DNA from: Octopus sinensis
Taxonomy: Eukaryota
Reading direction: 5' to 3'
Length of the DNA: 64,000 nucleotides
Assembly: GCF_006345805.1 (NCBI RefSeq)
Contig: NC_042997.1
Coordinates: forward strand, 61,628,001-61,692,000
In this document: piece by piece, positions 7,269 to 45,099 of the stretch
Layout of the letters: every line of letters starts with the position of its first letter
Position numbering within the stretch: the stretch's first letter is position 1
Made by a program: the position numbers and the translations under genes
Notes under the pieces: generated by a model
What the model was told of the DNA's origin: nothing
Database searches by the model: none
What the model saw: the letters and a program-made list of their open reading frames with translations, nothing else

Positions 7269-7299
<31 letters not shown>

Positions 7300-7300
7300 C
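6730..7300. repeat. Compound (AT)n microsatellite
   Basis: Directly visible. Confidence 0.95.
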
Positions 7301-10904: not shown

Positions 10905-12150
10905 ATTCAGTTTTATTTCAAGATTTCTTGCCAATGGAGAAAGAGTCGGTTTCTAACTTAGATCCAAGGCTCCTTCATTGGAAATTCAATATCAACAACA
11001 GGGTACTTTTGTATGTATGTACATATGTATGTATGTATATGTACAGATTTGTATGTTTTGTTTTATGTATGTATTTTCATGCATATAGTTGCATTTCTAG
11101 ACATGCTCATATATATTTAAATGATAAACGTCGGGAAAGTTTTACTGATTTTTAAAGTTCTAGTGATGGATTGGATCTGTAGTCTCCGAATTAGCTTTCA
11201 CCTTTCTGGTTTTGAGAAGCCTACTTTCTCAAGATTGGTATTTAGGCAGTTTATTACATATTCCAGAGTCCCAATAATTACAGGTATAAATTTGAACTTG
11301 TCATCTGGACAGAGTAACAGCAGATTTCTCATTAGTTCAGTGTACTTCAGATTTACGTTAACATCCGCTGGGCAGCTAATTCCCACAACTATACACAGTT
11401 TCCCTTCTCTATCCCAAATCATTATATCAGGTCTGTTGTGCTTACATTTTATTGAGGTTTTCATTGGGACATTCCATGAGTACTCCTTTTTATTATGAGT
11501 GGCTATGGCTTCTACCATACTGTGGGTTCTTATTTCTTTGTCCTTGTGGTTATCCTTCCAACGGATTTCATTATAGTGTCCTAGCAACAACAGCATGTCT
11601 CATCAGTAGATAATACCATGATGACATTTTCGGATACCTACTTACGAAGTGGGTGATATCTTCGGTGTTAACTCCACAAAGTCTGCATTGGTTGTCACAT
11701 TTTACTGCTTTTCCTGCATCTCTGACCCTTTGGTGCATCAGATATTTGGTTGATATTTCCTGTTCCTGGATTGCAAACGCATACTCTTCAAAATGGGAGG
11801 TAGTAATCCGGCTTTTGGTTCATGATAGACTGCTTTGATGATCAATGTTACCATCATCTTGGATCTTTCTACTAACATATCCATGCATAGTCTTCTGCTC
11901 ATATATGCTAATCCTTTCATCTGATGATACGTTGCGGTAGAGTCGTGCGACATCTTTGGACATGTAATTAAGGTATCAGACAAAAAAATGTTGCTCAAGG
12001 AGCTGCCTTCCAAGTCTTATGATGTTATCAGCCTCATGCTTGCAAACTTGGTCAAGGGAAATACTCCAACACTTGGTAGAGAAAATGTTGCCGAAGGGAT
12101 ATGATACGACATTCAAAGGTATTTTGAATCGGTGTTAAACCTCTGTCTCA
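10905..12150 (-). mobile_element. 5'-truncated non-LTR retrotransposon with restriction-like endonuclease (R4/Dong-like), decayed
   Basis: CRLCGVNTEDITH (CCHC knuckle), KHNRPDIMIWDREGKLCIVV.ISCPAD (PD..D RLE motif), KFIPVIIG. The 3' UTR ends in (TACA)n. Confidence 0.85.
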
Positions 12151-12165
12151 TATGTATGTATGTAT

Positions 12166-12237
12166 GATGACAAGTTCAGGTTTATACCTGTAATTATTGG
12201 GGCCCTGGAATATGTAATAAACTGCCTAAATACCAAT
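12166..12237 (+). repeat. 72-bp inverted copy of an internal segment (11234-11305) of the R4-like element, embedded in (TATG)n
   Basis: 68/72 identity to the reverse complement of 11234-11305 by direct comparison. Confidence 0.9.
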
Positions 12238-12444
12238 GTATGTATGTATGTATGTATGTATGTATGTATGTATGTATGTATGTATGTATGTATGTATTAT
12301 TGACTGTGTGTGTGATGCATGCATGATTCTAATCGAAGTGATAAAAGAATCTTGAAGACAAATAAAAAAAACCGTCGTCTTAGGAATTGAACATCGTTCC
12401 ATAAAAGTTCATTTCTAACAAAGAAAAAATTTTACATTTCTTAC

Positions 12445-13824: not shown

Positions 13825-13882
<58 letters not shown>

Positions 13883-13883
<1 letters not shown>

Positions 13884-14850
13884 TAGCAAACGCACCCCTC
13901 CTTTGGACGGCGTAATTTATTATAATAGCGCACTTCTTTGGACGGTTTAAACCGTATTAGCCGACAGCGTGAAGTCGTTTCAAGTTGATAAACGTAAAAT
14001 GTATAATTACAAATTTTGTTAGCAGTTTATCATATGGTATTAAGCAACCTAGGTAATGAATAATGTTTTTTTAACACAAATTGGCAGTTTGGCAGTTTAA
14101 ACACAAATTTGGCAATAAAAGAAAGTCATGAAATGAAATCATAATTGCAGTAGGCATTATGGATCCTATATCTTACCTGAAGCGTTTTGTAGTATGTACT
14201 TATAGTACTTTTAATGTTTGACACTACTGCATTGAAGCTTTTTTCAATGCAAGTTATGTATGATAGACAAAGGCGAGCATTTATAGCAAACACACAAATA
14301 GGATAATGACATATACAAAAATAAAGGTCAGAGCACGCTTATGAACGAACAGCGTGCGTGAAGTAAGAAGGGTCATTGAAGGTAATGTACTGTTAACCGC
14401 AATCACAGAAATGAAGCAAATATCAATGAAATGCTTGTAGGAAGTCTGCTTGCTAACGGCTACCGTTTGACGTAAATGCGAAGATTGCAGTAGAGGAGTA
14501 ACTACTTTAGGGTTGCTTTGTAGAAGACATTTTTGAGCGTAGATGAATAGGTTGTTTGGATGGCCAACTCTGGAACAACCGACGTAGAACTGTCTATGTG
14601 AAAAGCACGGTGTTCGAAGGTCCACTCCGACAACTTTCAGCGATTGAGCTTGTGCTTTGTTTATTGTTATGGCAAAGCTGAGCTTGAGAAGGAACTGAGG
14701 TCTCCGCATACGGTAGGGGAAGTTTGTTGGTGTTTGTGGAATTTTCGGAATAAAAACAGTATCGTTTTTTCCGTGTCCCATGATAATTTGGGCTTCAATG
14801 ACGTGGTCCATTGTTTGTTTGATCACAAGGCGAGTTCTATTGAATAGTGT
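13883..14850 (-). mobile_element. Helitron 3' fragment with Pif1-like helicase C-terminus
   Basis: ORF 14281-14826 has FAITINKAQAQSLKVVGVDLRTPCFSHRQFYVGCSRV (Pif1 motifs V-VI). Ends in CTAG (13883-13886) next to (TA)n with a GC-rich sub-terminal stem. Confidence 0.85.
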
Positions 14851-15562
14851 GGGTGTGTTTAGACTGCGTAAGAGGATGACGGAGCAACCAACTTTTAAGT
14901 GATTTTCATGGGGAGTGAGTCTTGGAGGATTTTCATGGGGATTGAGTCCTGGAGGATTTTCATTTGGAAGTTGAGAAATTCTGTTGGAAACTGTGTAACC
15001 TGATCGAGGTCGGTAACGGTGTCAACTGATCTGTAACAACGTTTTTGAGAAGGTAGCTTACTGAGTAAGTCGTAGTTAAGAGTGATGACAGGTGTATTTG
15101 TAGCTACAAGAACAGCCCTGTGCTAACGGGCAAATATCGGCAGTTTGCGGTGAATGGGCATTGTAAAAACTGTATAAATGTCGCAACTTTGTATAAGTAA
15201 AAACAGAGAATGTATATGATATGGATTAATTTCTGAAGGTATTTAAAAAACAATTTAAAGTTGATTTAAATTGCATGGCTACCTCAAGGAAAACTAATGT
15301 GCAAATACTGGCAGTTTGCAGAGAATGAGCATTGTAAAAACTGCAGTAGAAAACGAAGTGAAAGTAACATAACTACGTCAATGTCCCTTAAGGCAACGAT
15401 AGTTGGTATTTGTTATTTACATATGAGAAGGTAGGGGCGGCATTACTCATTATGTGGAAAAATTTGAAGTCTATGACCATTTCTGGAACATAAGTGATGT
15501 ATGTTCCCTACGTGAACGAAATTGGATGAAAAATATTGATTTTAGGGGGACCAAGAAAAAGG

Positions 15563-23310: not shown

Positions 23311-23323
23311 TGCTAGGACTTAC

Positions 23324-23473
23324 CAGTAATTCCCTGCTTTACATCTGCTTTCTCCCCACACAGACCGCAGGATTTTCGACAGTAATCTTCCATAAATGCC
23401 GGATTCCGTTCGCATTCTCCTTGGTTTGCCCAGATGGAACAAGGCCAGCCGCGGTGTTTATTCTTACAATTCG
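23324..23473 (-). CDS. Exon 10: ShKT domain 1 (CKNKHRGWPCSIWANQGECERNPAFMEDYCRKSCGLC)
   Basis: Six-Cys ShK spacing; ttcag/gtaagt; 150 nt, phase 1-1. Confidence 0.95.
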
Positions 23474-25019
23474 CTGAAGATTATTAAAAAAAAATTATAA
23501 ACCAAAAGGGATAATCATCTGAACCATTATTTACTAAATATATTTTATTATCATCACATATTTAAAAAGAAAACAGAAAGCATGAAGTAGTTTTTTATTC
23601 TGTATATTTTAATCCCTTTCAATAATTGACACAAGGCCCGAAATTTCGGGCGCAGGGGCTGGTTGATTACACTGAATCCAGGGCTCAAATGGTACTTAAT
23701 TTATCGATTCCGAGGGGAGGAAAGGCAAAGTTGACCTCTGCCACATTTGAGTCAATGAATCTTTTTTTTACACAGCCGTTCGACATGCTTGTAGCAGCAA
23801 CCAAATCTCTCTCAAATTACATCACTCTGTCTTAAAAAGGATATGGCACATTGGATAATTTAGTTTACTGCCGAAAAACAAGAAGTCAGAAAGATCACAG
23901 ATCATAGAGCTACTGTTGCAGGGTTGATCTTATTCATCAGCTGACTGTAGATGGTTCTATCATACAATCAGATTACCATTGGTGGAGTACTATGAATATT
24001 TTTCCCGTTACTTTTCAACATTTTTGGTCTTGGACTTTCTTTGTGTATTCCGGTGTTCTCATCTTATTCCACGTTTCAATATCCTCGAACCAGCCTCTCT
24101 TTGGTTGCTTCTTCTAATTTCACTTCCCATTTTCCCAAGCGATTAATTGCATTTGGAGATCATACTTCATTAAGCCAGTCACTTTCCGAAGCTTTAAGGA
24201 CATTGCTGTTGTTGCATAAAATCATTCACTTCTCCTTCTTTCTTCCTTTACATTCGTCCTATTGTTTTTAATCATTCTTCTTTTACTGAGTCCCTCTCTC
24301 GTCCTTTCTCCTCTCTCTCCTTTCTCATTCGGCTAGTAAGTTTGTAAATAACTATCTGGAAACTCATTCAAACTGGATTTAATATAATATGTTCCTGATG
24401 TTTTCGCACGTTCCATGTCAGGAGTCAATCCATCTCTGCAAACAAATGAACCGAAACCACTTTTCACTCTTTACCTAAGGCAGTGTTGTCCCAGCACGCA
24501 TTTGATTAAAGATGTTCTGTCCATGATCATCTCTATATTTCAGTCTTAATACAACTAGACTACACTAACAAAATGTTCTTTTGTAAAGACGGTAAAGTCG
24601 GTGATAGAGTTGGAGCATTTGCCGCTCGAGGCGGTTCTTGAATTTACCCTCCTCTCGCGTGCATTCAAAAGAATACGTGATACATGCATAAAATGCTGCC
24701 TCCAAAACATTGCTTCTTAAGATGGACCTTCACCTATCTCCCTTTTAGCTACAATAGTTGACAGGGTGTAATTTGATGGAGTTTTACTGCTATGTCTAGC
24801 AAATCTAGTGACCATGTACAACGTATTCGCTAAAAATGTAGGTCACATAAGTCAACCAAACATAAAGGTTTTACCTCTAACACTTTGCAATATTAACGAG
24901 GAATTCACCCATATCAAGTTCTTCGCTTATGAAACTGCCATTCTAAAGGCATCAACGTTAACAACACTCACATCCAAACAATACAGAGAATATATATCAT
25001 GAAAATAAAATAAACATAC

Positions 25020-25136
25020 CATCGACAGTAGCGCCCTCTCGACAATCTTGAGAACCATCTGGACATATACATTTGCAGTTTTCGTCAAGAACACCACCAT
25101 TCAGACATTTGATGTTATCCTTATCCGGACAACGTG
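25020..25136 (-). CDS. Exon 9: EGF-like module (CPDKDNIKCLNGGVLDENCKCICPDGSQDC)
   Basis: Six Cys with C.NGG...CxCxCP.G pattern; ccag acceptor, gtatgt donor; 117 nt, phase 1-1. Confidence 0.92.
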
Positions 25137-25143
25137 CTGGAGA

Positions 25144-25289
25144 ATAGAAAGAAAAACAAAGTCATGTGTGTACGTGTGTTTGTTTTCATATAAGTTATAT
25201 ATAAAACTAGTCAAACACTAGCCGTCATCAACCAGTGTGAAACTTCAAAGTGACTGTCAACGTTTTCCTTATATGTGTGTGTGTGAGTG

Positions 25290-25355
<66 letters not shown>

Positions 25356-25695
25356 CGTGCGTGTGTATGCACGTGCGCACAAACGTATGTGTGTAAGCGC
25401 ATGGCTTAGTGGTTAGGGGTATTGCACTCACGATTGCGAGATCATGGTTTCGATTCCCAGACCGGGCTTTGTGTTGTGTTCTTGAGCAAAGCACTTAATT
25501 CCAGGTTGCTCTGCAATCATTTCGTCATCTGGATATGTGGCACACGGTGCACCTGTTCAGGAAATGCCGATTTGATGGAGGGAGTGAGCTTGTGTGTAGA
25601 CATATATTTGATCATTATAAACAAATTATCTGTGTAGTTGTTCGGCAACAAATTGCCGAACCCTCATACGTCGTCTAACGAAGGGAGAGTCCACT
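25144..25695. repeat. Near-identical tandem segmental duplicate, copy A (contains a SINE head)
   Basis: Matches 27437-27978; outside the (TG)n tract the differences seen are single-base indels. Confidence 0.93.
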
Positions 25696-25928
25696 ATATA
25701 TATACATATATACATATATATATACATATATATAACATATATATATACATATATATATATATACATATATATTATATACATATATATATATACATATATA
25801 TATATAATATATATACATATATATATATCATATATATATATACATATATATATATAATACATATATATAACATATATATATATACATATATATACATTTA
25901 TATATATACATATATATACATATTATAT

Positions 25929-26005
<77 letters not shown>

Positions 26006-26092
26006 ATATACATATATATACATATATATACATATATATATACATATATATATAATACATATATATATATACCTATACATATATATATATAC

Positions 26093-26124
<32 letters not shown>

Positions 26125-26369
26125 CATATATATATACATATATACATATAATATATACATATACATATATATGTACATACATATATATATACATATACAT
26201 ATATATATATACATATATACATATACATATATACATATATACATATACATATATACATATACATATATACATATATACATATACATATATATATATACAT
26301 ATATATATACATATATATATATATATACATATACATATACATATATATGTACATACATATATATATAAC

Positions 26370-26400
<31 letters not shown>

Positions 26401-26763
26401 TATACATATATATATATACATATATATATACATATATATACATATATATATATACATATATATACATATATATACATATATATATACATATATATACATA
26501 TATATATACATATATATATATATACATATATATACATATATATACATATATATATATACATATATATATACATATATATACATATATATATATATAACAT
26601 GTACATATATATATATATAATATATACATATAAATATATATACATATATATATACTTATATATATAATATATACATATAAATATATATACTTATATATAT
26701 ATATATACATATATATATACATATATATATACATATACATATATATATAACATATATATATGC

Positions 26764-26807
<44 letters not shown>

Positions 26808-26943
26808 TTTATACATATATATATATATACATATATATATATACATATATATACATAATATATATATATACATATATATATATATACATATATATATACT
26901 TATATATATATATATACATATATATATACATATATATATATAC

Positions 26944-27001
<58 letters not shown>

Positions 27002-27045
27002 TATATACATATATATATATACATATATATAATATATATATATAC

Positions 27046-27078
<33 letters not shown>

Positions 27079-27253
27079 CATATTATATATACATATATAA
27101 TATATACATATATATATACATATATATATACATATATATATATACATTTATATATATACATATATATATATACATATATATATATACATATATATATATA
27201 CATATATATATACATATATATATATACATATATATATATACATAAATATATAC

Positions 27254-27318
<65 letters not shown>

Positions 27319-27366
27319 CATATATATATAATACATATATATATATATACGTATATACATATATAC

Positions 27367-27415
<49 letters not shown>

Positions 27416-27561
27416 CATATATATATATATACATATATAGAAAGAAAAACAAAGTCATGTGTGTACGTGTGTTTGTTTTCATATAAGTTATATATAAAAC
27501 TAGTCAAACACTAGCCGTCATCAACCAGTGTGAAACTTCAAAGTGACTGTCAACGTTTTCC

Positions 27562-27646
<85 letters not shown>

Positions 27647-28037
27647 CGTGTGTATGCACGTGCGCACAAACGTATGTGTGTAAGCGCATGGCTTAGTGGT
27701 TAGGGGTATTGCACTCACGATTGCGAGATCATGGTTTCGATTCCCAGACCGGGCTTTGTGTTGTGTTCTTGAGCAAAGCACTTAATTCCAGGTTGCTCTG
27801 CAACATTTCGTCATCTGATATGTGGCACACGGTGCACCTGTTCAGGAAATGCCGATTTGATGGAGGGAGTGAGCTTGTGTGTAGGACATATATTTGATCA
27901 TTATAAACAAATTATCTGTGTAGTTGTTCGGCAACAAATTGCCGAACCCTCATACGTCGTCTAACGAAGGAGAGTCCACATACTATATATACCATATATA
28001 CATATATATATACATATATATATACATATATATATAC

Positions 28038-28068
<31 letters not shown>

Positions 28069-28256
28069 CATATATATATACATATGTATATATACATATA
28101 TATACATATATATATATATACATTATATACATATATATATATACATATATATATATACATATATATACATATATATATATACATATATATATATACATAT
28201 ATATATATACATATATATACATATATATATAACATATATATACAATATAGTATTAC

Positions 28257-28287
<31 letters not shown>

Positions 28288-28493
28288 CATATATATATAT
28301 ATACATATATATATACATATATATACATATATATATACATAGCATAGAGATAACGAAATTTAAATTTTCTAAAGGTTAGTTGCCCGTTTTCCAGTTTCAA
28401 TTTTCCTGTAAAAGCGGATTATAAGTGGATAAAACAGTGTATTTGGCTTTAGAATAACCCTCTTTAGCCCTTAATTATATGATGTATATATAT

Positions 28494-28540
<47 letters not shown>

Positions 28541-28625
28541 CTATATATATATATATATTATACTATATTACACATATATACATATATTATATATACATAT
28601 ATATAATATATACATATATTATATC

Positions 28626-28657
<32 letters not shown>

Positions 28658-28737
28658 TATATACATATATATATCATATATATATATACATATACATATA
28701 TATATACATACTATATATACATATACATATATAATAC

Positions 28738-28769
<32 letters not shown>

Positions 28770-28811
28770 ATACATATATAATACATATACATATACATAT
28801 ATATATACATA

Positions 28812-28856
<45 letters not shown>

Positions 28857-29303
28857 ACGTATATATATATATACGTATACATATATATACGTATACATAT
28901 AATATATAAACATATATATATATATACATATATATACATAATATATATAATATACATATAATACATATATATACATATATATATACATATATATACATAT
29001 ATATATACATATATATATACATATATACATATATATACATATATATATACATATATATATACATATATATACATATATATATATATAATATATATATATA
29101 TATATTAATATATACATATAAATATATACATATATATACTTATATATATATATAATACAACATATATATATATATACTTATATATATACATATATATACA
29201 ATATATATATATATATATACATATATATATACATATATAATACATATATTATATATATATATTATACATATATTATATACACATATATATATCTACATAT
29301 AAC

Positions 29304-29335
<32 letters not shown>

Positions 29336-29548
29336 TATACATATATATATATGCATATATATATATAACTATATTATATATACGTATATATATATACATA
29401 TATATATATACATATATATACATATTATATACATATATATATATAATACATATATATATAATACATATATATATATATACATATATATATACATATATAT
29501 ATATACATATATATATATACATATATATATATACGTATATATATATAC

Positions 29549-29595
<47 letters not shown>

Positions 29596-29626
29596 CATAT
29601 ATATATACATATATATATATATATAC

Positions 29627-29677
<51 letters not shown>

Positions 29678-29707
29678 ATATATATATACATATATATATA
29701 TATATAC

Positions 29708-29738
<31 letters not shown>

Positions 29739-29807
29739 TATATCATATATATACATATATATATATATACATATATATATATACATATATATACATATTA
29801 TGTATAA

Positions 29808-29839
<32 letters not shown>

Positions 29840-30320
29840 ACATATATATATATACTATATATATACATATATATATACATATATATATACATATATTATA
29901 CATATATATATTACATATATATATACATTTATAATATACATATATATATATATACATATACATATATATACATATATAGATAATATCGGCGGTGCCCCAG
30001 CCATGGCACCAGCTCATAAGCTGAATGCTGGAAAATCAAATCAAAATCATATATACATATATATATATACATATATATATATACAATATATATATATATA
30101 ACATATATATATACATATATATTATATTACATATATATACATATATATATATACGTATATATATATATATCATATATATTATATATACATATATATATAT
30201 ACATATATATAATATATACATATATATATATACATATACATATATATATATACATATTATATATACATAATATACATATATATATATATATATATATCTA
30301 TTATATATATATATATATAT

Positions 30321-30352
<32 letters not shown>
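25696..30352. repeat. ~4.6-kb region dominated by (AT)n/(ATAC) arrays in intron 8
   Basis: Directly visible. Interrupted by duplicate copy B, a unique stretch at 28341-28480 and a LINE-tail fragment at ~29985-30045. Confidence 0.95.
27437..27978. repeat. Near-identical tandem segmental duplicate, copy B
   Basis: Matches 25144-25695. Confidence 0.93.
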
Positions 30353-30357
<5 letters not shown>

Positions 30358-30519
30358 TAATCCAAACAGCAGGTTGTAATGTTTCACTTAAAAGGAGAAT
30401 TATAATTTTCACTAGGGTGTTAAAAAACACTTACATTGCTAGAAATAAGAGCTAAAATGCTCTAATGTTGTAGTTAATGCACATGAATGAAAACATATAC
30501 ACTAACAGGGATCATAATT

Positions 30520-30620
30520 GTCCGAAAAATGCCGATCGAGAATTCTTAAGACTGATGTCAGTTTCGCCAAATTCCGTTGCCTCATCAGTTAAGCCCGCTC
30601 AGTGTTCGGCTTTTCCGGAC
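30520..30620 (-). ncRNA. Type I hammerhead ribozyme motif (intronic, same strand as host gene)
   Basis: Minus strand reads CTTAA-CTGATGA-GGCAACGGAATTTGGC-GAAA-CTGACATCAG-TC/TTAAG. Core CUGAUGA + GAAA, GUC cleavage triplet, stem I CTTAA:TTAAG extended by GCCGA:TCGGC and GTCCGGAAAA:TTTTTCGGAC, stem III CTG:CAG. Stem II is imperfect. Confidence 0.8.
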
Positions 30621-30735
30621 ATGTTTCTCTATTTGTATTTATATTTTCATCATCCAATTTGATGAATGATTTAGCGATTCGTTAATGTGTCTACACAAAA
30701 TGAATATAAATATCAGGTTTATGTATATATATATA

Positions 30736-30768
<33 letters not shown>

Positions 30769-30902
30769 ATGCCACACAAACACACATATGCATAATATGT
30801 AAAATCGTAAATGACAGAGGAATAGTTTGATGAAATTTTATTTAACAATAAGAAATTTCAAATATCACGACAAATTGTTTCGTGACTTGAATGCAGACAC
30901 AC

Positions 30903-30938
<36 letters not shown>

Positions 30939-32511
30939 AGTATGTGTATAAATCTAAAATGATCTATGAGAAATAATCCAGTGTGGCCATTTACAAGAAT
31001 TTGGACTAAAATAGCTTTGAGGGATAACACAGTTCACTTATGGCTCTAGTGTCCTGGGAAAAAGTATGACTACTGAAACATCATATGCAGTTTGTATTCC
31101 TAGTCAACAAGGTACAGCGATAACATTCTCCAGTATTATAAGGAACTAGGTTACTCAGAGAAATTACTTGGAAACTGTCGATATCACAAGCAGTACATAA
31201 CTTCTTAGATTTTTTATACTCACAATATCAAATATGTTAATTCTAATTAGTAATATTTAGAAACAATTTTCGATGAGGAAATTACAATATCAATCATAGA
31301 GTAATAATATTATTTAAATCATTACGGTAAATACGGGAGACAAATCTGAAAATACTTCTGTCTTTTGAGATGTTCACCGAGAAACAGGCTTTATCGAATT
31401 TTATTGAGAAGTAGCAATGAGAGAGTTACTACAAAAGTAAGATGCTGTACTCTAGCTTTTTCTATGCTCACTGCATTAAATATGTTAACACTAACTTAAC
31501 TTATTGCTTTACATGCGAATGATGTCTCTATGTAATTCTGTAAGTAACATTCTCATGTGAACAGGGTAAATTGAATTTTGGCGCCCATCAAGTATATTTT
31601 TAATATTTTTTTCACAAGGAGAAATTGCTAATGTAGAAATAAACAGTTTATCATAATTAACAAGTCAAAGAGAACAGTTCACAGTCCGTAAAACTGCGCA
31701 ATGTTCCGTTTTCTCTCTCTCTCTATCTATATTTATATCTAATGTATGTGTGTACACACTTTATTTGTGGATTGAGAAGGCAACCAATGGTTTTATGTAG
31801 AAGAGATCTCCACAGTTGCTCGAGCGAACAATTTGAAAATGTAGGTAGTTAACTAAAAAATGAATACATGAAACCAGTGGTTGTCTTGTTAATCCACAAA
31901 TAACGAATATTAATCTATGGTGTTGAGCACTCTTCCCCGTTTGATTCAAGCGTGTGTGTGTGTGTGTAATGTTTCTTTCCATACAGCTAGTATTTGAAAA
32001 ATTCCAACTCATGCCATAGCACCCCTACCACGTGACGCCCTAGGCAATTACCCGGGTTGCCAGTGTCTTCAACTGACACTGCAAGTGCATGTTTATTATT
32101 TACTTAATTATCCTCTCTTATCAATGCTTTGGTAAATATAGCATAAAACATCCTCCTTTACTGTGAATGTCTAACAAAGCAGTACATGATGGATTTATCT
32201 ACCATACTTGTCGGATTAATTAAAATAATATTAATTTTTTCATTAATGATTGCCTTCAGGTACTTCTCCATAACTCCAGTTTCGAGTTTTGCAGCATCCC
32301 GAATAAAAAATATTAGTTTCAGACACTAGTCAGAATTTATATCAGCTTCAACATTATAAATTAATGATCCGTGAATTAGCTTACTAAGTTAATTGTCTTC
32401 ATGCTCTTAAGAAAAGCATGTCGGTTATAATTTTCTATTTACCTTTCGCTGAAAATTAGAAGTACGGAAATATTGAATAAAACTGTTTGAAAGAATTGTC
32501 ATATATATTAC

Positions 32512-32647
32512 CTCTACAGTTGTACATTTTGTTCACTATTTCCACATCACTATACGCTAATTCTTTTTGATATACTCTTCCAATTTCGTCTTCTCGAGAT
32601 TTGTCTAGCGCGGAAATGGTTTGAGATTTTCCATCATATGAAAAAGC
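32512..32647 (-). CDS. Exon 8: C-terminal astacin domain (AFSYDGKSQTI...LAYSDVEIVNKMYNC)
   Basis: cag acceptor, gtaata donor; 136 nt, phase 0 to 1. Matches the astacin AFS.dG..TI and L...D...vN.mY.C patterns. Confidence 0.95.
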
Positions 32648-33158
32648 CTGTTCAAAATAAAATATAAATTGAATAAAAACAAACAGTATTTCTGCCAAGA
32701 AATGAAATCCTTACTCGTAAATGATTATCTGTTCTGGTTGCTCATTTACCTCTAGTAAACTCTGCAAAGTGGGGTCATCCCGACTTTATTTCAGGTAGCA
32801 TATCTTGGGATAGGTTATATAATATATTCTTGTTTTAAGATGGTAAGGTTTGATTTTAGGGAATTTGGTCGCTATTTCTAAAGGTCACGTAGAAGGTACA
32901 CTGTTGACTCGTTTATATATGCTTTGTTTATAATGCCCGATAAAGATGATTATTTACATATAAAGGTATTTTATATATCTGACAAGGAACTCATAGGCTA
33001 TAATTTCATTGGATATCACTTCTGTCTGCCAGAAAACATCTGACACTGTTATTCTACGGTGCATAGAATTGTCTATGTTTGTAGCTCATAGTATTTAACA
33101 GATACTGTATGTGTGATTTTACATATACACAAATATATATATTATGTATTATATTATA

Positions 33159-34712: not shown

Positions 34713-34919
34713 TTCATAACATAAAACATACACCCACACATTCTAACGTCATATCAACATAATTCTTATCAGAATAATCCAATTATCAACATATCATGTG
34801 GAGGTTGTTTGCTCCAATTCACTTCGACTCTCCCATCCTCTTACTTCCCAATTCTACATACACACTCTCTCCAGCTCGTTTTATTTCACTGGATTTATGA
34901 AATGGTAAATTATACTCAC

Positions 34920-35123
34920 TGTAATTCCATAGTGCATGACTGACGACAACTCATATGGCACATTCATGCTATTGATAACACCTTTAGAGTATTTGTTAAA
35001 CCAGATTCTCATGCTTGGCAAGACATTTTGGTAAATAATTTTAATGTGCCTATCACGATCAGGTAGCTGATGCTCATGAACAAGACCTACGGCATGACCA
35101 ACTTCGTGTAGATAAAGTCCTTT
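34920..35123 (-). CDS. Exon 7: catalytic zinc site HEVGHAVGLVHEHQLPDRD and Met-turn SVMHY
   Basis: HExxHxxGxxHE and SxMHY metzincin/astacin signatures; tgcag acceptor, gtgagt donor; 204 nt, phase 0 to 0. Confidence 0.97.
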
Positions 35124-35852
35124 CTGCAATAAAAAATGAAATGTTTTTTTTTTTCTAAAACAAACTCAAATTATTTGAGATTACACAGACTGAATGGGGA
35201 ATTTTTTCTTAATACCAGGACCAAATTTTGATGGTATGCTGAGAAAAATAGTGAGTGTTTAATTTTTAAAAAATCAGTGTTATTTCATTTTTCAACTTCG
35301 TAGATATGCCGGTACAATATAATGAACGTTTTATTTTACAGATTCATAAAATGTAACACAAATTATTGCTTTGACGTTAAGGGTTAAATTGTTCTTTACC
35401 TATGGATTTGTGGTTCTGTGAAAATTTACAAGCGAGTGGTAATGTCAGATTTGAATATGGGCGAAATGTCACCCGCAGGCAACTTTTCTTACATCTGTTA
35501 TACGTAGATCTAAGTTCCACGTAATTGATATATATTCCTACTTTATAAATTTTGCTCAAAGTTTTTGATGCTAGTATGCATATACATGAGTAGTTCTAAA
35601 ATCGTATTCCGATGTGCATTGGTACGACAGCAAAGACTATCTAGCAGTACCGCGAAGTGTTAAAAATATAATTATACGGCTTTAGAAAATATATATGAAT
35701 GCTTGCATGTCTGGAAAAAATGTGTCATACATATTTTTTTTATACCGAAGTATGATTAATGAAATAAAATAAACAATATTCTTTTCTATATTCTTTCTAA
35801 ATTTTTAACTTTAAAACTTTTTTTATAAAATTTCCATGCGAAATGCACTCAT

Positions 35853-36138
35853 AATTTTTTATTTGGTCTCCAACAATACACGAAATTCAAGAAATTAATA
35901 ACGCAGTGAATTAATTAATGATAATCTCTAGAAGCCGAGAAAAATGATTCTGCAATTTTTAGCTGAACTAGCTGCACTGATGATATGTTTATAGTGATCA
36001 AATATTTGTGCTGCACTTAAGCTCACTCTTTTCATTGCAGAATCATTTTTCTCGGCTTCCAGGGACTATCATTAATTAATTCACTGGGTTATTAATTTCT
36101 TGAACTTCGTGAATTATTGGAGACCAAATAAAAAAATT
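35853..36138. mobile_element. MITE with ~105-bp terminal inverted repeats
   Basis: aattttttatttggtctccaa...gaagccgagaaaaatgattctgcaat pairs with attgcagaatcatttttctcggcttc...ttggagaccaaataaaaaaatt. Confidence 0.85.
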
Positions 36139-36764
36139 GACGTTGCTTGTGCCACACGTTACATATTGAAATGATCGCAAAGTAACATGAGAGGAAGTAA
36201 TTTTGCCCAAAACACACTGTATCGCTCGGACTGGGAATCGAACCCACGATCTCACGATCGCGAATATAACAGCCCTAACTACTTAGCCATGTGCCCTCAT
36301 ATACAGACTCTATATGTGAAATATAGCAAATTATCACCAGTTCATTTGAAGCATGCACGCACAGAGACAAACCTGCAAAGATGCATTCGTTCAACTCCAC
36401 ATACATAACAACTTCGGCGCAAAGTGTTTGTTGTCATACCATACACATATAACATGCATACGCTGAACATTCAGAAACACATATACATGCACGCGAGCGC
36501 GTACACACACACACACACTTCACCTCATATGTTATGGAAAGAACAGCTATTTATCAATCATCAAATCATAAATCTCTACTTAACAAAATACAGAATAGAT
36601 TGCATTTGCTAATACTGAAAGCTAGACTTTATGGCAGTAGTTGTGATTTGTGAACAGCATACGTGAATGTACATACATACACTAGTAAGCACTAACATAC
36701 AAACACATGCCTTTGTATAAGGACTTCTAAACTATAAGGTTAATGTTATAAATATATAACTTAC

Positions 36765-36834
36765 ATAACGGCAACCATTAGCATCCAAATTTACGGCTTG
36801 CACGCCTCCGACCATACCCAGTTGTGAATTACAT
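36765..36834 (-). CDS. Exon 6: astacin domain (CNSQLGMVGGVQAVNLDANGCRY)
   Basis: ttctcag acceptor, gtaagt donor; 70 nt, phase 2 to 0. Matches the astacin GC.S.vG..GG.Q...L...C pattern. Confidence 0.95.
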
Positions 36835-37053
36835 CTGAGAAGTAAAAGACAGGCAGTTATTATTTACACTTATTAAAAATTAAACATAAAAATTGACTTT
36901 TGGGTAGTTTTGGAACGGATTAATTATATTTTGATTAATTTCAATAGCGAAAATTGATTTGTAAAACGAGTAAATCGTAAAACGAGCTAGGTCATGGAAC
37001 GAATTAAACTCGTACTGCGAGGAATCACTGTATATATATATATATATATGTTG

Positions 37054-37195
37054 AGGCGCAATGGCCCAGTGATTAGGGCAGCGGACTCGCGGTCATAGGA
37101 TCGCGGTTTCGATTCCCAGACCGGGCGTTGTGAGTGTTTATTGAGCGAAAACACCTAAAGCTCCACGAGGCTCCGGCAGGGATGGTGGTGATAAC
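37054..37195 (+). mobile_element. tRNA-derived SINE head
   Basis: gaggcgcaatggcccagtgattagggcagcggactc...ggtttcgattcccagaccgggc (A/B-box-like). Related heads at 25397 and 27684, and on minus at ~36185-36300, 44640-44775, 50770-50905, 57700-57885 and 59300-59500. Confidence 0.75.
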
Positions 37196-37239
37196 ATAAA
37201 TTTCACAGTTCATAATATAATATGGAATCATGTTGAACC

Positions 37240-37431
37240 GTTAATCTCTACACATTTTTCTCTCTCTGTTATTTTCGTACTCTCTCTATTTTTTCTTCTC
37301 AATCATTTCTGTTGAAGAGCGTAGGCTCAAAGCGTCAAAGATTTTTCCATTCTTCCCAGGCATCAAACTTATATATCTGCTTGTTGTTCCCTCACCTGTC
37401 TTCATCTTTTGCTTTCTGTAAATTTGAACTA
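37240..37431 (+). mobile_element. Short dispersed repeat containing a minimal hammerhead-like motif, copy 2
   Basis: TTT-CTGTTGAA-GAGC(GTAG)GCTC-AAAGC-GTC-AAAG. Downstream tgttgtt...cacctgtcttc.tctttt is shared with copy 1; ends at (TA)n. Confidence 0.5.
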
Positions 37432-37447
37432 TAATTATATATATATA

Positions 37448-37497
<50 letters not shown>

Positions 37498-37744
37498 GCT
37501 TAGTAAGATCAAGAATATTGTTTAACTCGCGGTGAGTTTTTCAAAACCTCAGAGACAACACTATTTTTACTGATTCGAAGAAATACTGGTATCCTTTGAT
37601 TTATTTAGTGCAATCTTATATTTACTTTACTATTACTTTATTTCCAGTACTGAATTGTTTCTAACAATCCCCCTCGTCTGAATAGAACGTAGAAGAAAAA
37701 GTGACGTAGCCTGTGATATTCTCCTTGAACATATGTGCCGCGAG

Positions 37745-37965
37745 AAGACGTCGAGCTAGCTGAACCATTAGCACGCCAGGCAAAATGCTTAGCGGTATTT
37801 TGTTCGTCTTTACGTCCTGATTTTAAATTCCACCGACGTCGACTTTGCCTTTCATCCTTTCAGGTTCGATAAAATAAGTACCAGTTGAGTACTCGGTGTC
37901 GATGTAAACAATTTACCACTCCCTCAAAATTGTTGGCTTTGTGCCAAAATTTGAAACCAATATTT
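37745..37965 (+). mobile_element. Abundant SINE-like repeat (gtcgactttgcctttcatccttt..gataaaataagtaccagttgagtact)
   Basis: Related copies, mostly minus, at ~13005-13220, 23625-23750, 57320-57520, 59800-60020, 61195-61375 and in the 51600-54600 region. Confidence 0.75.
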
Positions 37966-38088
37966 CGTATGTGCTTCTAAGCAAAATTGCAGATACCTAG
38001 ATTCTCCACCATTTGAGATGTAAATTTTAAAAAAAGAAAAGAAATATATTACCATGCTGTACGTTTGTAGAGATACAATACTACTCAC

Positions 38089-38209
38089 CCACTGCCGTGT
38101 CTAAAGAGAATTCTGTTTTTGTCAGTCTGTCTTGCAGGCACAAACTTGAGACAAGTGTATCTTTCCCATTCAGTTAAGGCGCGTTTAATGAAATAAAAGT
38201 CCTTTACCG
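38089..38209 (-). CDS. Exon 5: astacin domain (KRALTEWERYTCLKFVP...FRHGSG)
   Basis: tag acceptor, gtgagt donor; 121 nt, phase 1 to 2. Has the astacin WE..TCL.F motif. Confidence 0.95.
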
Positions 38210-38521
38210 CTATTACAAACAAAGAGAAAGAAAAATATTTTCATTAATTTCGTTATATAAATGATTTTTAAAATGATGACAGTATTTATTTTCATCGACG
38301 TATGTTCTAATATTGAGGTCTATCTCGTCAATCACATATCCGAATTCATGAAAACTGGAATCATGATACAATGGCTCGACTTCATCAACCATAAATTTCT
38401 CAAGAATTTATCTGATGACTGGCACAATACTCAGTGAATTCCAGTGATACATATATACATGTATGTATGTATGTATGTATGTATGTATGTATGTATGTAT
38501 GTATGTATGTATGTATGTATG

Positions 38522-38868
38522 TCATTATTCAGTTTTATTTCAAGATTTCGTGTCAATAGAGTAACAGCCGTCTTCTAACCAAGGTCCAAGGCTCCTTCAT
38601 TGGAATTTCAACAACAACGGTATTTTTGTACGTACGTACGTATGCATATATGTATGCATATGAGCAGATTTGTATGTTTTGTTTTATGTATGTATTCTCA
38701 TGCATATAGTGGCATATCTAGACATGCTCATATATACTTAAATGATAAAATATTGGAAGATTTTACTGATTTTTACAGTTCTAGTGACGGATTGGACCTG
38801 CAGTCTTCGTATCAGCTTTCTCCTTTCTGGTTTTGAGAAGCCTAACTTCTCAAGATTGGTATTTAGGC
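38522..38868 (-). mobile_element. 3' end of the same R4/Dong-like family as 10905-12150, ending in (TACA)n
   Basis: Colinear with 10905-11250; encodes LNTNLEKLGFSKPERRKLIRRLQVQSVTRTVKISK. Confidence 0.85.
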
Positions 38869-40974: not shown

Positions 40975-41099
40975 TAAATTAGTTAGTGTGCGAGAGAGGG
41001 AGTATTTATAGACGGTAGACATGCGCAAGCTTCATCCAGTTTTTAGTTGAGCCAAATATCTGTTTGCTTCATGCGCTTGTTTGATGAGGCTAGGGTCAT

Positions 41100-41235
41100 C
41101 AGGCATAGAGCCGACCAGGTTCACAAGTAGTCCTGTGTCAGCCTTTCTGCATCCTCCAAGATGATGTTGAGCCTCTGGAGATCTGCCTTAATCACGTCCA
41201 GCCAGCCAGTGCGGAGCCATGCAATTTGATACAAT
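41100..41235 (-). mobile_element. RTE-type LINE 3' ORF fragment
   Basis: RTGWLDVIKADLQRLNIILEDAERLTQD resembles the RTE C-terminus (GRP...W.D.I..D). Confidence 0.5.
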
Positions 41236-43509: not shown

Positions 43510-45099
43510 CTGAAATGATATTGAATTATGATAGAGGCGACTCTGAGCATTTTGCAATATTTTGTTATTAAAATTTTTAAACCTTTTATATTAAATGAAG
43601 TTTGCAGATGAACGCTGCTGTTTAGCCTGAAGCAGTCTAAAACAAGTAAACCCATGATGAAAAGCATTCCAGTCGCAACCACCTCGTCTTTTTTTTCCCA
43701 GGTTTATACGACTGTGGGTATCAGAATCGAGAGAGTGTAAGACAAAATATCTTGCAATTATTTGATCTTGTGCATTCCTTTATTTTTTAGCTTAAATCCC
43801 GCCCATATCTATTTTGCCTGCCTTGATTTTAAAATCAATAATAAAAGAGCCAGTCATAGGGCGAATCTAGATATATATTACTATCTCAGTTTATCCACAG
43901 TCCAATTAATGAAAGCAATAAAACAATATATGGATAAAGTTGTAAAGACAGTATTTTCAGTTGGAAAACATCTTTAACATATACTGTTAGAAAATACTCG
44001 ATTCCTAACATGTGCTGTTATATAAAAGTCATGATTGTTGATTAACTCCGGCTCGGCCCTGATTGAACAGACATATGGCTAAAGATATTTCAGTTACAAC
44101 CATGGGCTTTAAAAAAAAACCCCATCCTTTCCTTTCACCAAGTATGGAAGTTCTTAAAAACACTTGAGCGCTTCCTCTCCGCTAGTGACTAAGTTGTTGA
44201 AAACAACGGTCATCATGACATTTTTTTCCGAACTACAACGGACTCACATCAAATGTGTCCCACTTTTCGAGCATATTACGTTCAGATTTGTAGGAAAGTT
44301 GGTTGCTTTTCTATCAAGTCGGGCAATGACGTGGAATTATAAAAGGGATATTAGGCAACGGTGCTTGAAGTTTTAAAAAAAGACATCTTAAGAAGATCTA
44401 CATTTTAGAAAGAATATCTTAAAATTGAGTTGGTTGAGAGTTCTATAATCACAATTATTAATTCTGTGTTTTATCCAGAGGTGTGGCTTCCATACCAAAT
44501 TAGCAGGAACAGTTATTTATCGTTGTAAAGTTTCCTTTTCTAGTCATACCGACTCGTAAAGGGTCGGTTTACCGGTTTTTGTGGCGTATATATTCCCCAC
44601 CTAGACGGGATACCGGTCCGTCGTAGGATTACCCATTTTTGCCAGCTTAGTGGACTGGAGCAATATGAAATTAAATGCTTTGCTCAAGAACACAGCGTGT
44701 TGCCCGGTCCAGGAATCGAAACCAAAATCTTACGATCATGAGTCCAACATTCGAACAACTAAGCCACTCACCTCCACTCTCTATAAATTCCTATACAATT
44801 TCAACGCGCGTCGCACACGCACACACATACATAATACGTACATACATACATCTTTTTCCTACATTCTCCCTACTAAACATAAAATTTATACCGTATTCTT
44901 TGTACTTTGTTATTTTTGAGTTATTCTTTCTGTCTCTAAAAGTTTTTTTTAACACACACACACACAGATTCTCCATAGGGACTAACCTTACTCACAATGC
45001 TGTCTTTGTAGCCATAGACAGTAAAACACTATTATATCTCTTAACGACGTTTTCTGTTCACTAATTTTAAGTCATAGTTGTTGATACTATTTAATAAAT

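What the first reader, a model, noticed from the sequence alone, without database searches (positions are those of the whole stretch)
30520..30620. Type I hammerhead ribozyme fold in intron 8, in the sense orientation of the astacin-ShK pre-mRNA
Seen: the minus strand carries the full hammerhead core (CUGAUGA, GAAA, GUC with predicted cut between 30550 and 30549). Stem III is CUG/CAG with an ACAU loop. Stem I is open and long: CUUAA:UUAAG, an internal loop with possible GAG:CUC, then GCCGA:UCGGC and GUCCGGAAAA:UUUUUCGGAC. Stem II (GGCAACGGAAUUUGGC) has two mismatches. Known: extended type I hammerheads with loop-bulge tertiary contacts are efficient and occur in Penelope-like elements and non-LTR retrozymes; a few have been retained in animal introns. 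Inference: the host gene is transcribed from this strand, so an active ribozyme would cut the nascent transcript between the protease exons and the EGF/ShK exons. That could affect splicing or expression, or uncouple protease-only from ShK-bearing transcripts. No complete parent element is evident around it.
Basis: partly seen in the sequence, partly recalled or inferred. Interest (0 to 1): 0.85.

Follow-up and report, generated by a model that had tools for sequence, protein, structure and literature searches.

The report
Hammerhead ribozyme repeat copy in intron
A complete hammerhead self-cleaving RNA motif does sit in this octopus protease gene intron, but it is a stray copy of a ribozyme-carrying mobile repeat family rather than a demonstrated gene regulator, so it is fairly ordinary.

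Summary
On the minus strand, 30620-30520 carries a full type I hammerhead: CUGAUGA, GAAA and GUC, with the cut predicted between 30550 and 30549. Helix III has 4 bp and helix I has 5 bp plus a long extension. Helix II is weakened by a G·G mismatch. It lies in sense orientation in a 7,375-nt GT-AG intron between the last astacin exon and the EGF-like exon. Chance is excluded.

It is not a private feature of this gene. A sample of 187 kb of Octopus sinensis and O. bimaculoides DNA held a homologue at an unrelated locus. That copy ends at a (TA)n tract at the same 3' position. It has six compensatory base-pair changes in helices I and II, and two substitutions in the catalytic core. The same sample held a separate 354-nt tandem pair of canonical type I hammerheads, also set in (TA)n.

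The candidate is a solo copy with no tandem partner and no reverse transcriptase nearby. Best reading: a passenger copy of a retrozyme or Penelope-like hammerhead repeat. Catalytic competence is undecided. Rfam silence and thermodynamic misfolding proved uninformative, because validated ribozymes behave the same way. Co-option by the host gene has no support. New member of a known kind; low to moderate interest.

The parts
30520..30620 (-). Whole hammerhead hairpin: helix I (long, open), catalytic core, helix II and helix III
   Evidence: Sequence read and hand-built structure; -37.8 kcal/mol, z = -5.2
30582..30588 (-). Core box CUGAUGA (C3-A9)
30566..30581 (-). Helix II GGCAA/UUGGC with loop CGGAAU. 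There is a G.G mismatch at 10.2/11.2. The homologous copy has G-C at that position.
30562..30565 (-). Core box GAAA (G12, A13, A14, A15.1)
30551..30562 (-). Helix III ACUG/CAGU with tetraloop ACAU
   Evidence: The helix is identical in the O. bimaculoides copy.
30549..30550 (-). Predicted scissile bond: after C17 (30550) and before U1.1 (30549)
   Evidence: Inferred from the hammerhead numbering; cleavage was not tested.
30545..30549 (-). Helix I 3' strand, inner 5 bp (UUAAG). It pairs with CUUAA at 30593-30589.
   Evidence: Four of these five pairs show compensatory double changes in L008.
30480..30657 (-). Extended rod: the hairpin arms continue as an imperfect 178-nt hairpin
   Evidence: Inverted repeat I1; fold -56.9 kcal/mol, z = -5.8
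30374..30616 (-). Segment homologous to the O. bimaculoides copy (L008 7081-7339): hammerhead plus about 145 nt downstream, ending at (TA)n
   Evidence: blastn, nhmmer, alignment A3
30353..30719 (-). 367-nt unique island (33.5% GC) bounded on both sides by (TA)n microsatellite. This is the likely limit of the inserted element.
25137..32511 (-). Host intron, GT...AG, phase 1, 7,375 nt, 55% purine/pyrimidine microsatellite. The cut site is 1,962 nt from the 5' splice site.
32512..32647 (-). Last astacin-domain exon (Pfam Astacin profile positions 141-188 of 189)
25011..25136 (-). Next exon: Cys-rich, EGF-like. Its start follows the AG acceptor. The end coordinate, before a GT donor, is approximate.
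   Evidence: There is no Pfam hit for this exon.

Best explanation
The feature is a solitary genomic copy of a short, non-autonomous retroelement that carries a type I hammerhead ribozyme. The element is of the non-LTR retrozyme or Penelope-like-derived kind. It inserted into a (TA)n microsatellite inside a 7.4-kb intron of an octopod astacin-EGF-ShK gene, and it happens to lie in the gene's sense orientation.

In the active source elements of such families, tandem copies are transcribed and each hammerhead cuts itself. The monomer that is released is circularised and reverse-transcribed into new sites. Here there is only one copy, so no monomer or circle can be released. The motif is simply transcribed as part of the pre-mRNA.

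If it folds, C17's 2'-OH would attack the bond between 30550 and 30549. This would leave a 2',3'-cyclic phosphate and a 5'-OH within an intron that is discarded anyway. The G.G mismatch at helix II position 10.2/11.2 probably weakens it.

Shown here: the motif, its position and strand, the family homologue with compensatory changes, and the existence of tandem hammerhead repeats set in (TA)n tracts in Octopus.

Inferred: the retrotransposition mechanism, the lack of any host function, and weak or uncertain catalytic activity.
For: 1. The core is complete and all three helices are present. It is the only such motif in the window, and none occurred in 400 randomised windows.
2. A covariance model built only from three experimentally validated retrozyme hammerheads (coral, mussel and axolotl; PMC7229834 Suppl. 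Table 2) ranks the candidate first in the window. The match is full length, 19.1 bits, E about 0.003.
3. A homologous copy lies at a non-syntenic locus in O. bimaculoides (L008 7081-7339): blastn 73% identity, E = 1e-19; nhmmer E = 1.6e-20. It has the same 3' end at (TA)n. Helix III and the GUC are identical. Six base pairs in helices I and II are changed on both sides, against 0-2 in slid controls. The long helix I is also kept.
4. That copy has G-C at 10.2/11.2 and two core substitutions (A9 to G, G12 to A). This is the pattern expected of independently decaying copies.
5. O. sinensis L007 5226-5945 is a tandem dimer with a 354-nt period and 98.5% identity. It carries two canonical type I hammerheads, has (TA)n on both sides and has an inverted partial copy at one end. 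Decayed relatives of that family lie in L005 and L010.
6. The candidate's island is 367 nt and 33.5% GC and is set in (TA)n. This fits published retrozyme monomers (170-400 nt, low GC; PMC7229834) and the (TA)n insertion bias of Penelope-like elements (PMC8557442).
Against: - Only one homologue was found, in another species and at about 70% identity. Copy number in the source genome is unknown.
- In that homologue, the stretch aligned to the CUGAUGA box is part of an 18-nt perfect inverted repeat shared with an adjacent SINE. Homology of the 5' half is therefore less secure than that of helix II, helix III and the 3' region.
- The candidate's core is fully intact and the hairpin keeps 8 CpG (observed/expected 1.36, against 0.79 for the window). 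This could reflect youth, but it could also reflect constraint.
- There is no tandem partner, no RT or GIY-YIG ORF in the window, and no evidence of circular RNA.
- In vertebrates, retrozymes are reported as depleted from introns (bioRxiv 10.64898/2026.07.22.740005). An intact sense-strand intronic copy is therefore not the commonest situation.
Confidence: 0.75

Rival explanations
1. Co-opted intronic ribozyme. The copy derives from a mobile element but has been retained because co-transcriptional self-cleavage in this intron tunes production of the full-length astacin-EGF-ShK mRNA. This would parallel the conserved intronic type I hammerheads of amniote genes such as RECK.
For: - Sense orientation, between the protease exons and the EGF/ShK exons.
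- All core nucleotides intact, and helices I and III perfect.
- CpG-rich hairpin.
- Precedent in amniotes (PMC6155905).
Against: - No orthologous intron could be examined.
- The element has a homologue at an unrelated locus, so it is not a single-copy conserved motif.
- Helix II carries a G.G mismatch that the homologue lacks.
- No Rfam HH9 or HH10 match.
- The site is deep in a microsatellite-filled intron, 1,962 nt from the 5' splice site and about 5.4 kb from the 3' splice site, with no alternative exon nearby.
Confidence: 0.07
2. Chance hammerhead-like motif inside an unrelated long hairpin, such as an inverted repeat, a MITE-like foldback or a microRNA-like precursor. The true structure would then be the minimum-free-energy hairpin in which CUGAUG pairs with CAUCAG.
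For: - The minimum-free-energy fold is that hairpin, not the three-way junction (-37.8 against -30.1 kcal/mol). No transcript prefix has the hammerhead as its best fold.
- Rfam gives no hit at its gathering thresholds.
Against: - The same thermodynamic penalty (7.7 kcal/mol) is computed for the efficiently cleaving mussel retrozyme hammerhead.
- Rfam also fails to call the textbook tandem hammerheads of L007.
- The expected number of chance motifs is about 1.5e-4 per window even without the long helix I.
- Compensatory changes in helices I and II between two copies support the hammerhead pairing and not only the hairpin.
Confidence: 0.03
3. Intron-encoded box C/D snoRNA, since the sequence holds UGAUGA and CUGA boxes in the sense orientation of the host gene.
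For: Weak local Rfam matches to snoRNA families over the UGAUGA/CUGA stretches (DdR16, snoU83B, sR18, sR2), with E from 0.5 to 3.4.
Against: - All matches are far below the gathering scores and are partial.
- C-box and D-box spacing of about 20 nt is too short.
- No terminal stem lies next to the boxes.
- The boxes are fully explained by the hammerhead core.
Confidence: 0.01

Closest known systems
Metazoan non-LTR retrozymes (type I hammerhead repeats of coral, mussel and axolotl; Cervera & de la Pena 2020, PMC7229834)
   Same: - Type I hammerhead with helix I of 5-6 bp, an internal loop and a further helix.
- Helix II of 4-5 bp.
- Unit of a few hundred nt (367-nt island) with low GC.
- Highly self-paired.
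- Multi-copy in the lineage.
- Top hit of a model built from their ribozymes.
   Different: - Solo rather than tandem at this locus.
- Helix III is longer (4 bp with a non-palindromic ACAU loop, against 2-3 bp with a palindromic tetraloop).
- Helix II has a G.G mismatch.
- No circular RNA has been shown.
- No sequence similarity to the mussel or coral units, or to the octopus tandem family in L007.
Penelope-like elements and their pseudo-LTR hammerheads (PMC8557442; Cervera & de la Pena 2014, as cited there)
   Same: - Insertion into (TA)n microsatellites.
- Hammerhead near the 3' end of the unit.
- A 3' end shared between copies while the 5' end varies, which looks like 5' truncation.
   Different: - No RT or GIY-YIG coding sequence in the window.
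- Penelope-like hammerheads are usually minimal, with little or no helix III. This one has a stable helix III and a long helix I.
Sm-alpha SINE-like hammerhead element of Schistosoma (as summarised in PMC6155905)
   Same: Short non-autonomous repeat that carries a full type I hammerhead with an extended, internally looped helix I.
   Different: No tRNA-like head is detected here (ARAGORN found none). No sequence similarity was tested.
Conserved intronic type I hammerheads of amniotes (RECK, CTCL and DTNB introns; Rfam HH9/HH10)
   Same: Type I topology, intronic, sense strand, presumably derived from a retroelement.
   Different: - Those are defined by positional conservation across species, which is not shown here.
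- A non-syntenic homologue shows that this motif belongs to a repeat family.
- No match to the HH9 or HH10 models.

Membership tests
Hammerhead ribozyme, type I topology | Conserved core: C3 U4 G5 A6 N7 G8 A9, G12 A13 A14, the A15.1-U16.1 pair, and H17 (not G) at the cleavage site | tested here: met
   All positions are present: CUGAUGA 30588-30582, GAAA 30565-30562, U16.1 at 30551, C17 at 30550.
Hammerhead ribozyme, type I topology | Three helices around the core, with helix I open and helices II and III closed by loops | tested here: met
   Helix I has 5 bp plus an extension. Helix II has G-C, a G.G mismatch, then 3 bp and a 6-nt loop. Helix III has 4 bp and a tetraloop. Helices I and II show 6 compensatory pair changes against the L008 copy.
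Hammerhead ribozyme, type I topology | Score above the curated threshold of an Rfam hammerhead model | tested here: not met
   No hit at gathering score. The best local matches are RAGATH-1-hammerhead at 16.3 bits and Hammerhead_3 at 16.2 bits, against thresholds of 56.3 and 48.5. Control: Rfam also misses the canonical tandem hammerheads of L007, so this failure carries little weight.
Hammerhead ribozyme, type I topology | Match to a model of experimentally validated metazoan type I hammerheads | tested here: met
   Model R1 (coral, mussel, axolotl): top hit in the window, full length, 19.1 bits, E about 0.003 (rough). The next hit, at 15.6 bits, lacks the core. The L007 hammerhead scores 27.2 bits.
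Hammerhead ribozyme, type I topology | Tertiary contact between loop 2 and the internal loop of helix I | not testable with these tools
   The geometry is plausible: 5 bp to the helix I internal loop and 5 positions to loop 2. The contact itself cannot be scored.
Hammerhead ribozyme, type I topology | Self-cleavage | not testable with these tools
   Nearest-neighbour energies disfavour the active fold by 8.1 kcal/mol. They do the same, by 7.7 kcal/mol, for the efficient mussel ribozyme, so they cannot decide.
Non-LTR retrozyme | Head-to-tail tandem copies, each with a hammerhead | tested here: not met
   Single copy in the window.
Non-LTR retrozyme | Monomer of about 170-400 nt, low GC, highly self-paired | tested here: inconclusive
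   The island is 367 nt and 33.5% GC, with a 178-nt rod at z = -5.8. The true element limits are uncertain: homology to L008 covers only 30616-30374.
Non-LTR retrozyme | Dispersed multi-copy family in the genome | tested here: inconclusive
   One homologue in 187 kb of O. sinensis and O. bimaculoides DNA. The source genome itself could not be searched.
Non-LTR retrozyme | Expression as linear and circular monomer RNA | not testable with these tools
   No RNA data are available.
Penelope-like element (3' end or pseudo-LTR) | Reverse transcriptase and GIY-YIG endonuclease ORF | tested here: not met
   No YxDD or GIY-YIG-bearing ORF of plausible composition in the window.
Penelope-like element (3' end or pseudo-LTR) | Insertion into microsatellite, often (TA)n | tested here: met
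   (TA)n lies on both sides of the island. The L008 copy ends at (TA)n at the same position. Caveat: 55% of this intron is such repeat.
Penelope-like element (3' end or pseudo-LTR) | Minimal hammerhead with little or no helix III | tested here: not met
   Helix III has 4 bp and a tetraloop.
Domesticated intronic hammerhead (HH9/HH10 kind) | Intronic, on the sense strand of the host gene | tested here: met
   Astacin and ShK exons lie on the minus strand. GT-AG intron at 32511-25137.
Domesticated intronic hammerhead (HH9/HH10 kind) | Conserved at the orthologous position across species | not testable with these tools
   No orthologous intron could be fetched. The only close relative contig (L001) covers 34730-36490.
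Domesticated intronic hammerhead (HH9/HH10 kind) | Isolated motif, not embedded in a repeat unit | tested here: not met
   The hammerhead plus about 145 nt of flank recur at a non-syntenic locus in O. bimaculoides.

The most novel reading that the evidence does not exclude
The copy is catalytically competent and has been retained by the host. Co-transcriptional self-cleavage 1,962 nt into this intron would lower or gate production of the full-length protease-EGF-ShK mRNA. This would be the first co-opted intronic hammerhead in an invertebrate, and in a secreted protease with toxin-like ShK domains.
Probability: 0.05. Interest if true: 0.7.

Novelty: new member of a known kind. Interest (0 to 1): 0.27.

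Why it matters
As it stands, this adds one more hammerhead-bearing repeat family to the known retrozyme and Penelope-like families. It comes from octopods, where I found no paper describing such elements in the library searched. The giant squid genome paper lists only 235 Rfam Hammerhead_1 hits.

Two practical points follow:
- Rfam thresholds miss even perfect octopus hammerheads, so cephalopod ribozyme counts are probably underestimates.
- An intact, sense-strand hammerhead in a long intron is a convenient natural test of whether ribozyme cleavage inside an intron matters for splicing.

It would become important only if cleavage in vivo and positional conservation were shown.

Tried and rejected
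1. **Rfam.** There was no hit at gathering thresholds, and only 12-16-bit local matches at permissive settings. I first read this as evidence against the motif. I dropped that reading when Rfam also missed the canonical L007 hammerheads.

2. **Thermodynamics.** The active fold has probability about 2e-6. A competing CUGAUG:CAUCAG helix exists, no transcript prefix favours the hammerhead, and the barrier out of the active fold is 6 kcal/mol. I rejected this as a predictor of activity after controls with validated ribozymes gave the same penalties.

3. **Pattern scans of public collections.** The metagenome scan gave one hit inside a prokaryotic coding region with no helix I, which is chance. 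The viral scan gave none.

4. **Searching for spurious ORF calls across relatives of the element.**
   - The word-indexed search with the 62-aa antisense ORF found nothing.
   - The full HMMER search gave three tandem-repeat ORFs whose scores were inflated by repetition.
   - The most similar of these, P0015, lies on a locus with no CUGAUGA.

5. **Orthologue hunt with the astacin protein.**
   - The best named hits were gastropods at 45-54% identity.
   - L003 is too distant.
   - L001 is 78% identical at the nucleotide level but does not reach the intron.

6. **snoRNA and microRNA readings.** There were only weak partial Rfam matches. The mir-297 and mir-466 hits are TA/TG microsatellite.

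7. **tRNA-like head.** ARAGORN found none.

8. **Second-best hit of model R1.** The hit at 41073-41130 lacks GAAA and is chance.

Full report
**1. What is in the sequence**

On the minus strand, 30620-30520 reads as follows:

- helix I 5' strand: GUCCGGAAAAGCCGAACACUGAGCGGGCUUAA
- core: CUGAUGA (30588-30582)
- helix II: GGCAA, loop CGGAAU, UUGGC
- core: GAAA (30565-30562)
- helix III: CUG, loop ACAU, CAG
- U16.1, then C17 at 30550
- helix I 3' strand: UUAAGAAUUCUCGAUCGGCAUUUUUCGGAC

All conserved core positions are present.

Helix III has 4 bp, counting A15.1-U16.1. Helix I has 5 bp next to the core, an internal loop, and then about 20 more pairs. Helix II has the usual G10.1-C11.1 pair, a G.G mismatch at 10.2/11.2, and three further pairs.

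The arms continue as an imperfect rod over 30657-30480, which folds at -56.9 kcal/mol with z = -5.8.

**2. Is it more than chance?**

A staged descriptor scan finds this as the only hammerhead with at least 5 bp of helix I in the window. None was found in 400 randomised double-strand windows.

The stage before helix I occurs 0.0175 times per random window. That extrapolates to about 1.5e-4 per window for a minimal motif. A whole-genome scan could therefore turn up a few minimal motifs by chance, but not one with roughly 20 extra helix I pairs.

A covariance model built only from three experimentally validated retrozyme hammerheads ranks the candidate first in the window. These came from coral, mussel and axolotl, with sequences taken from PMC7229834 Supplementary Table 2. 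The match is full length, 19.1 bits, E about 0.003 with rough calibration. The next hit, at 15.6 bits, lacks GAAA.

**3. Two tests that looked negative but are not informative**

*Rfam.* There is no hit at gathering scores. Permissive settings give only 12-16-bit local matches, although these are in the correct register. However, Rfam also fails to call two textbook-perfect tandem hammerheads from O. sinensis.

*Thermodynamics.* The minimum-free-energy fold is a plain hairpin in which CUGAUG pairs with CAUCAG. The hammerhead-compatible ensemble is 8.1 kcal/mol worse, giving a probability of about 2e-6.

Under the same calculation, validated ribozymes give similar penalties:

| Ribozyme | Penalty (kcal/mol) |
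|---|---|
| Candidate | 8.1 |
| Mussel retrozyme (efficient cleaver) | 7.7 |
| Coral | 4.9 |
| Axolotl Ax353 | 4.0 |
| Axolotl Ax330 | 7.7 |

Neither result speaks to catalytic activity.

**4. Host gene and position**

Pfam places astacin exons on the minus strand:

- 38088-38240: profile positions 22-56. This match, at 20.1 bits, is below Pfam's 22.5-bit cutoff.
- 34884-35165: profile positions 78-145, including the HExxH motif.
- 32459-32710: profile positions 141-188.

ShK exons lie at 23316-23480 and further downstream.

The last astacin exon ends at 32512 and is followed by a GT donor. The Cys-rich, EGF-like exon starts at 25136 after an AG acceptor. The reading phase is compatible.

The intron is 7,375 nt, and 55% of it is alternating purine/pyrimidine microsatellite. 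The cut site is 1,962 nt from the 5' splice site. Sense orientation is confirmed. The label 'intron 8' could not be checked.

A Helitron-like helicase fragment in the window has its best hits in Octopus sinensis and O. bimaculoides, at 60-74% identity. The source is therefore an octopod.

**5. What it belongs to**

The hammerhead sits in a 367-nt unique island (30353-30719, 33.5% GC) with (TA)n on both sides. There is no second copy in the window. No reverse transcriptase or GIY-YIG ORF was found either.

No tool could search octopus genomes by DNA. I therefore sampled 187 kb of O. sinensis and O. bimaculoides around nine Helitron fragments. Two things turned up.

*(a) A homologue of the candidate's unit.* L008 7081-7339 (O. 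bimaculoides CM046605.1) is homologous to window 30616-30374.

- blastn gives 73% identity with E = 1e-19. nhmmer gives E = 1.6e-20.
- The locus is not syntenic. No host-gene exon matches there, and the only other shared element, the Helitron fragment, aligns in the opposite relative orientation.
- Both copies end at a (TA)n tract within about 11 nt of the same position.
- Helix III and the GUC are identical in the two copies.
- Four pairs of helix I and two pairs of helix II differ on both sides yet still pair. Slid controls give 0-2 such pairs.
- The long helix I is also kept, with a different sequence.
- In that copy 10.2/11.2 is G-C. The candidate's G.G is therefore probably a change specific to this copy.
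- That copy has two core substitutions, A9 to G and G12 to A.

*(b) A separate tandem hammerhead repeat.* L007 5226-5945 (O. sinensis) is a tandem dimer.

- The period is 354 nt and the two monomers are 98.5% identical.
- It carries two canonical type I hammerheads: CUGACGA, GAAA, GUC, with a 2-bp helix III and a UCGA loop.
- (TA)n lies on both sides, and a 35-nt inverted partial copy sits at one end.
- One of its two hammerheads scores 27.2 bits with model R1; the other was not listed in that search.
- Decayed relatives of this family lie in L005 and L010.

This is the published pattern of non-LTR retrozymes: 170-400 nt, low GC, tandem (PMC7229834). It also fits Penelope-like insertions, which show (TA)n bias, tandem copies and inverted copies (PMC8557442).

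**6. Best explanation**

The candidate is a solo copy of a second octopod hammerhead-repeat family. It inserted into a (TA)n tract of the intron and is carried along in the pre-mRNA.

With only one ribozyme, no monomer or circle can be released. At most, the intron RNA is nicked. The mismatch in helix II probably weakens it. For comparison, a natural axolotl hammerhead with a U.U at the base of helix II cleaves only 22% in 1 h.

I put this at 0.75.

**7. Rivals**

- *Co-option by the host gene: 0.07.* The position and strand fit, and amniote precedents exist (PMC6155905). But there is no evidence of conservation, and the motif belongs to a repeat family.
- *Chance motif in a hairpin: 0.03.* The statistics and the compensatory changes contradict it.
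- *Box C/D snoRNA: 0.01.* There are only weak partial matches, and the box spacing is wrong.

**8. Limits**

- Only one homologue was found, and it comes from another species.
- Its 5' half overlaps an 18-nt perfect palindrome shared with a neighbouring SINE. Homology of the CUGAUGA region is therefore less certain.
- The source genome, the orthologous intron and RNA data were out of reach.
- The intact core and the CpG-rich hairpin (8 CpG, observed/expected 1.36, against 0.79 for the window) fit a young insertion but do not exclude constraint.

**9. Verdict**

The functional interpretation is not supported. This is a new member of a known kind, and I score interest at about 0.27.

Noticed in passing
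L007 5226-5945 (O. sinensis CM016874.1), minus strand: Tandem dimer with a 354-nt period and 98.5% identity. It carries two canonical type I hammerheads (CUGACGA...GAAA...GUC, with a 2-bp helix III and a UCGA loop). (TA)n lies on both sides, and a 35-nt inverted partial copy sits at the 5' end. It looks like an octopus retrozyme or Penelope-like derivative. Rfam does not call it at gathering score. Decayed relatives lie at L005 1473-1772, L005 7241-7504 and L010 18934-19041.
   Followed up: partly
L008 about 7290-7345 (O. bimaculoides): In the homologous copy, the 18 nt GGCTGATCCCACTGAAGG is aligned to helix I plus the CUGAUGA box. It recurs as a perfect inverted copy 16 nt upstream, where it forms the head of an antisense tRNA-type SINE. 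It is unclear whether this reflects a shared SINE-like head, a foldback made at insertion, or coincidence.
   Followed up: partly
window 25144-25720 and 27437-28008: A segment of about 580 nt that starts 8 nt upstream of the EGF-exon acceptor is duplicated 2.3 kb further into the same intron at 97% identity. The duplicate includes a SINE copy and the polypyrimidine stretch.
   Followed up: partly
window 13881-15121, minus strand: Helitron-like Pif1 helicase fragment (Pfam Pif1_2B_dom) inside an intron among the ShK exons. Its relatives in O. sinensis and O. bimaculoides are about 80% identical at the DNA level.
   Followed up: partly
window 36168-36294, 44658-44766, 57786-57882, 59386-59504, and within 25400-25520 and 27690-27810: Copies of a tRNA-derived SINE with a GGTTCGATTCC-like T-arm, 73-77% identical to each other. 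ARAGORN calls no tRNA in the window.
   Followed up: no
window 11201-11599 (-), 12139-12300 (+), 38741-38860 (-): The same retroelement 3' end (peptide ...IPVIIG.LEYVINCLNTNLEK.GFSKPER) occurs three times. Two of the three copies were seen to run into a (TGTA/CATA)n-type microsatellite. There is no Pfam hit.
   Followed up: no
L001 (Logan SRR11869391) against window 34730-36490: A 1.9-kb contig from another sample is 78% identical across the astacin HExxH exon and its flanking intron. It is either a related octopod or a paralogue, and it does not reach the hammerhead intron.
   Followed up: partly
window 35166-38087, minus strand: The astacin exon that should encode Pfam profile positions 57-77 (the Cys-rich stretch before HExxH) was not located among open frames of 25 aa or more.
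   Followed up: no
window 30711-30793: Rfam mir-297, mir-466 and mir-1277 matches at permissive settings (the best is 34.2 bits against a gathering score of 90) are (TA)n/(TG)n microsatellite, not microRNA genes.
   Followed up: yes
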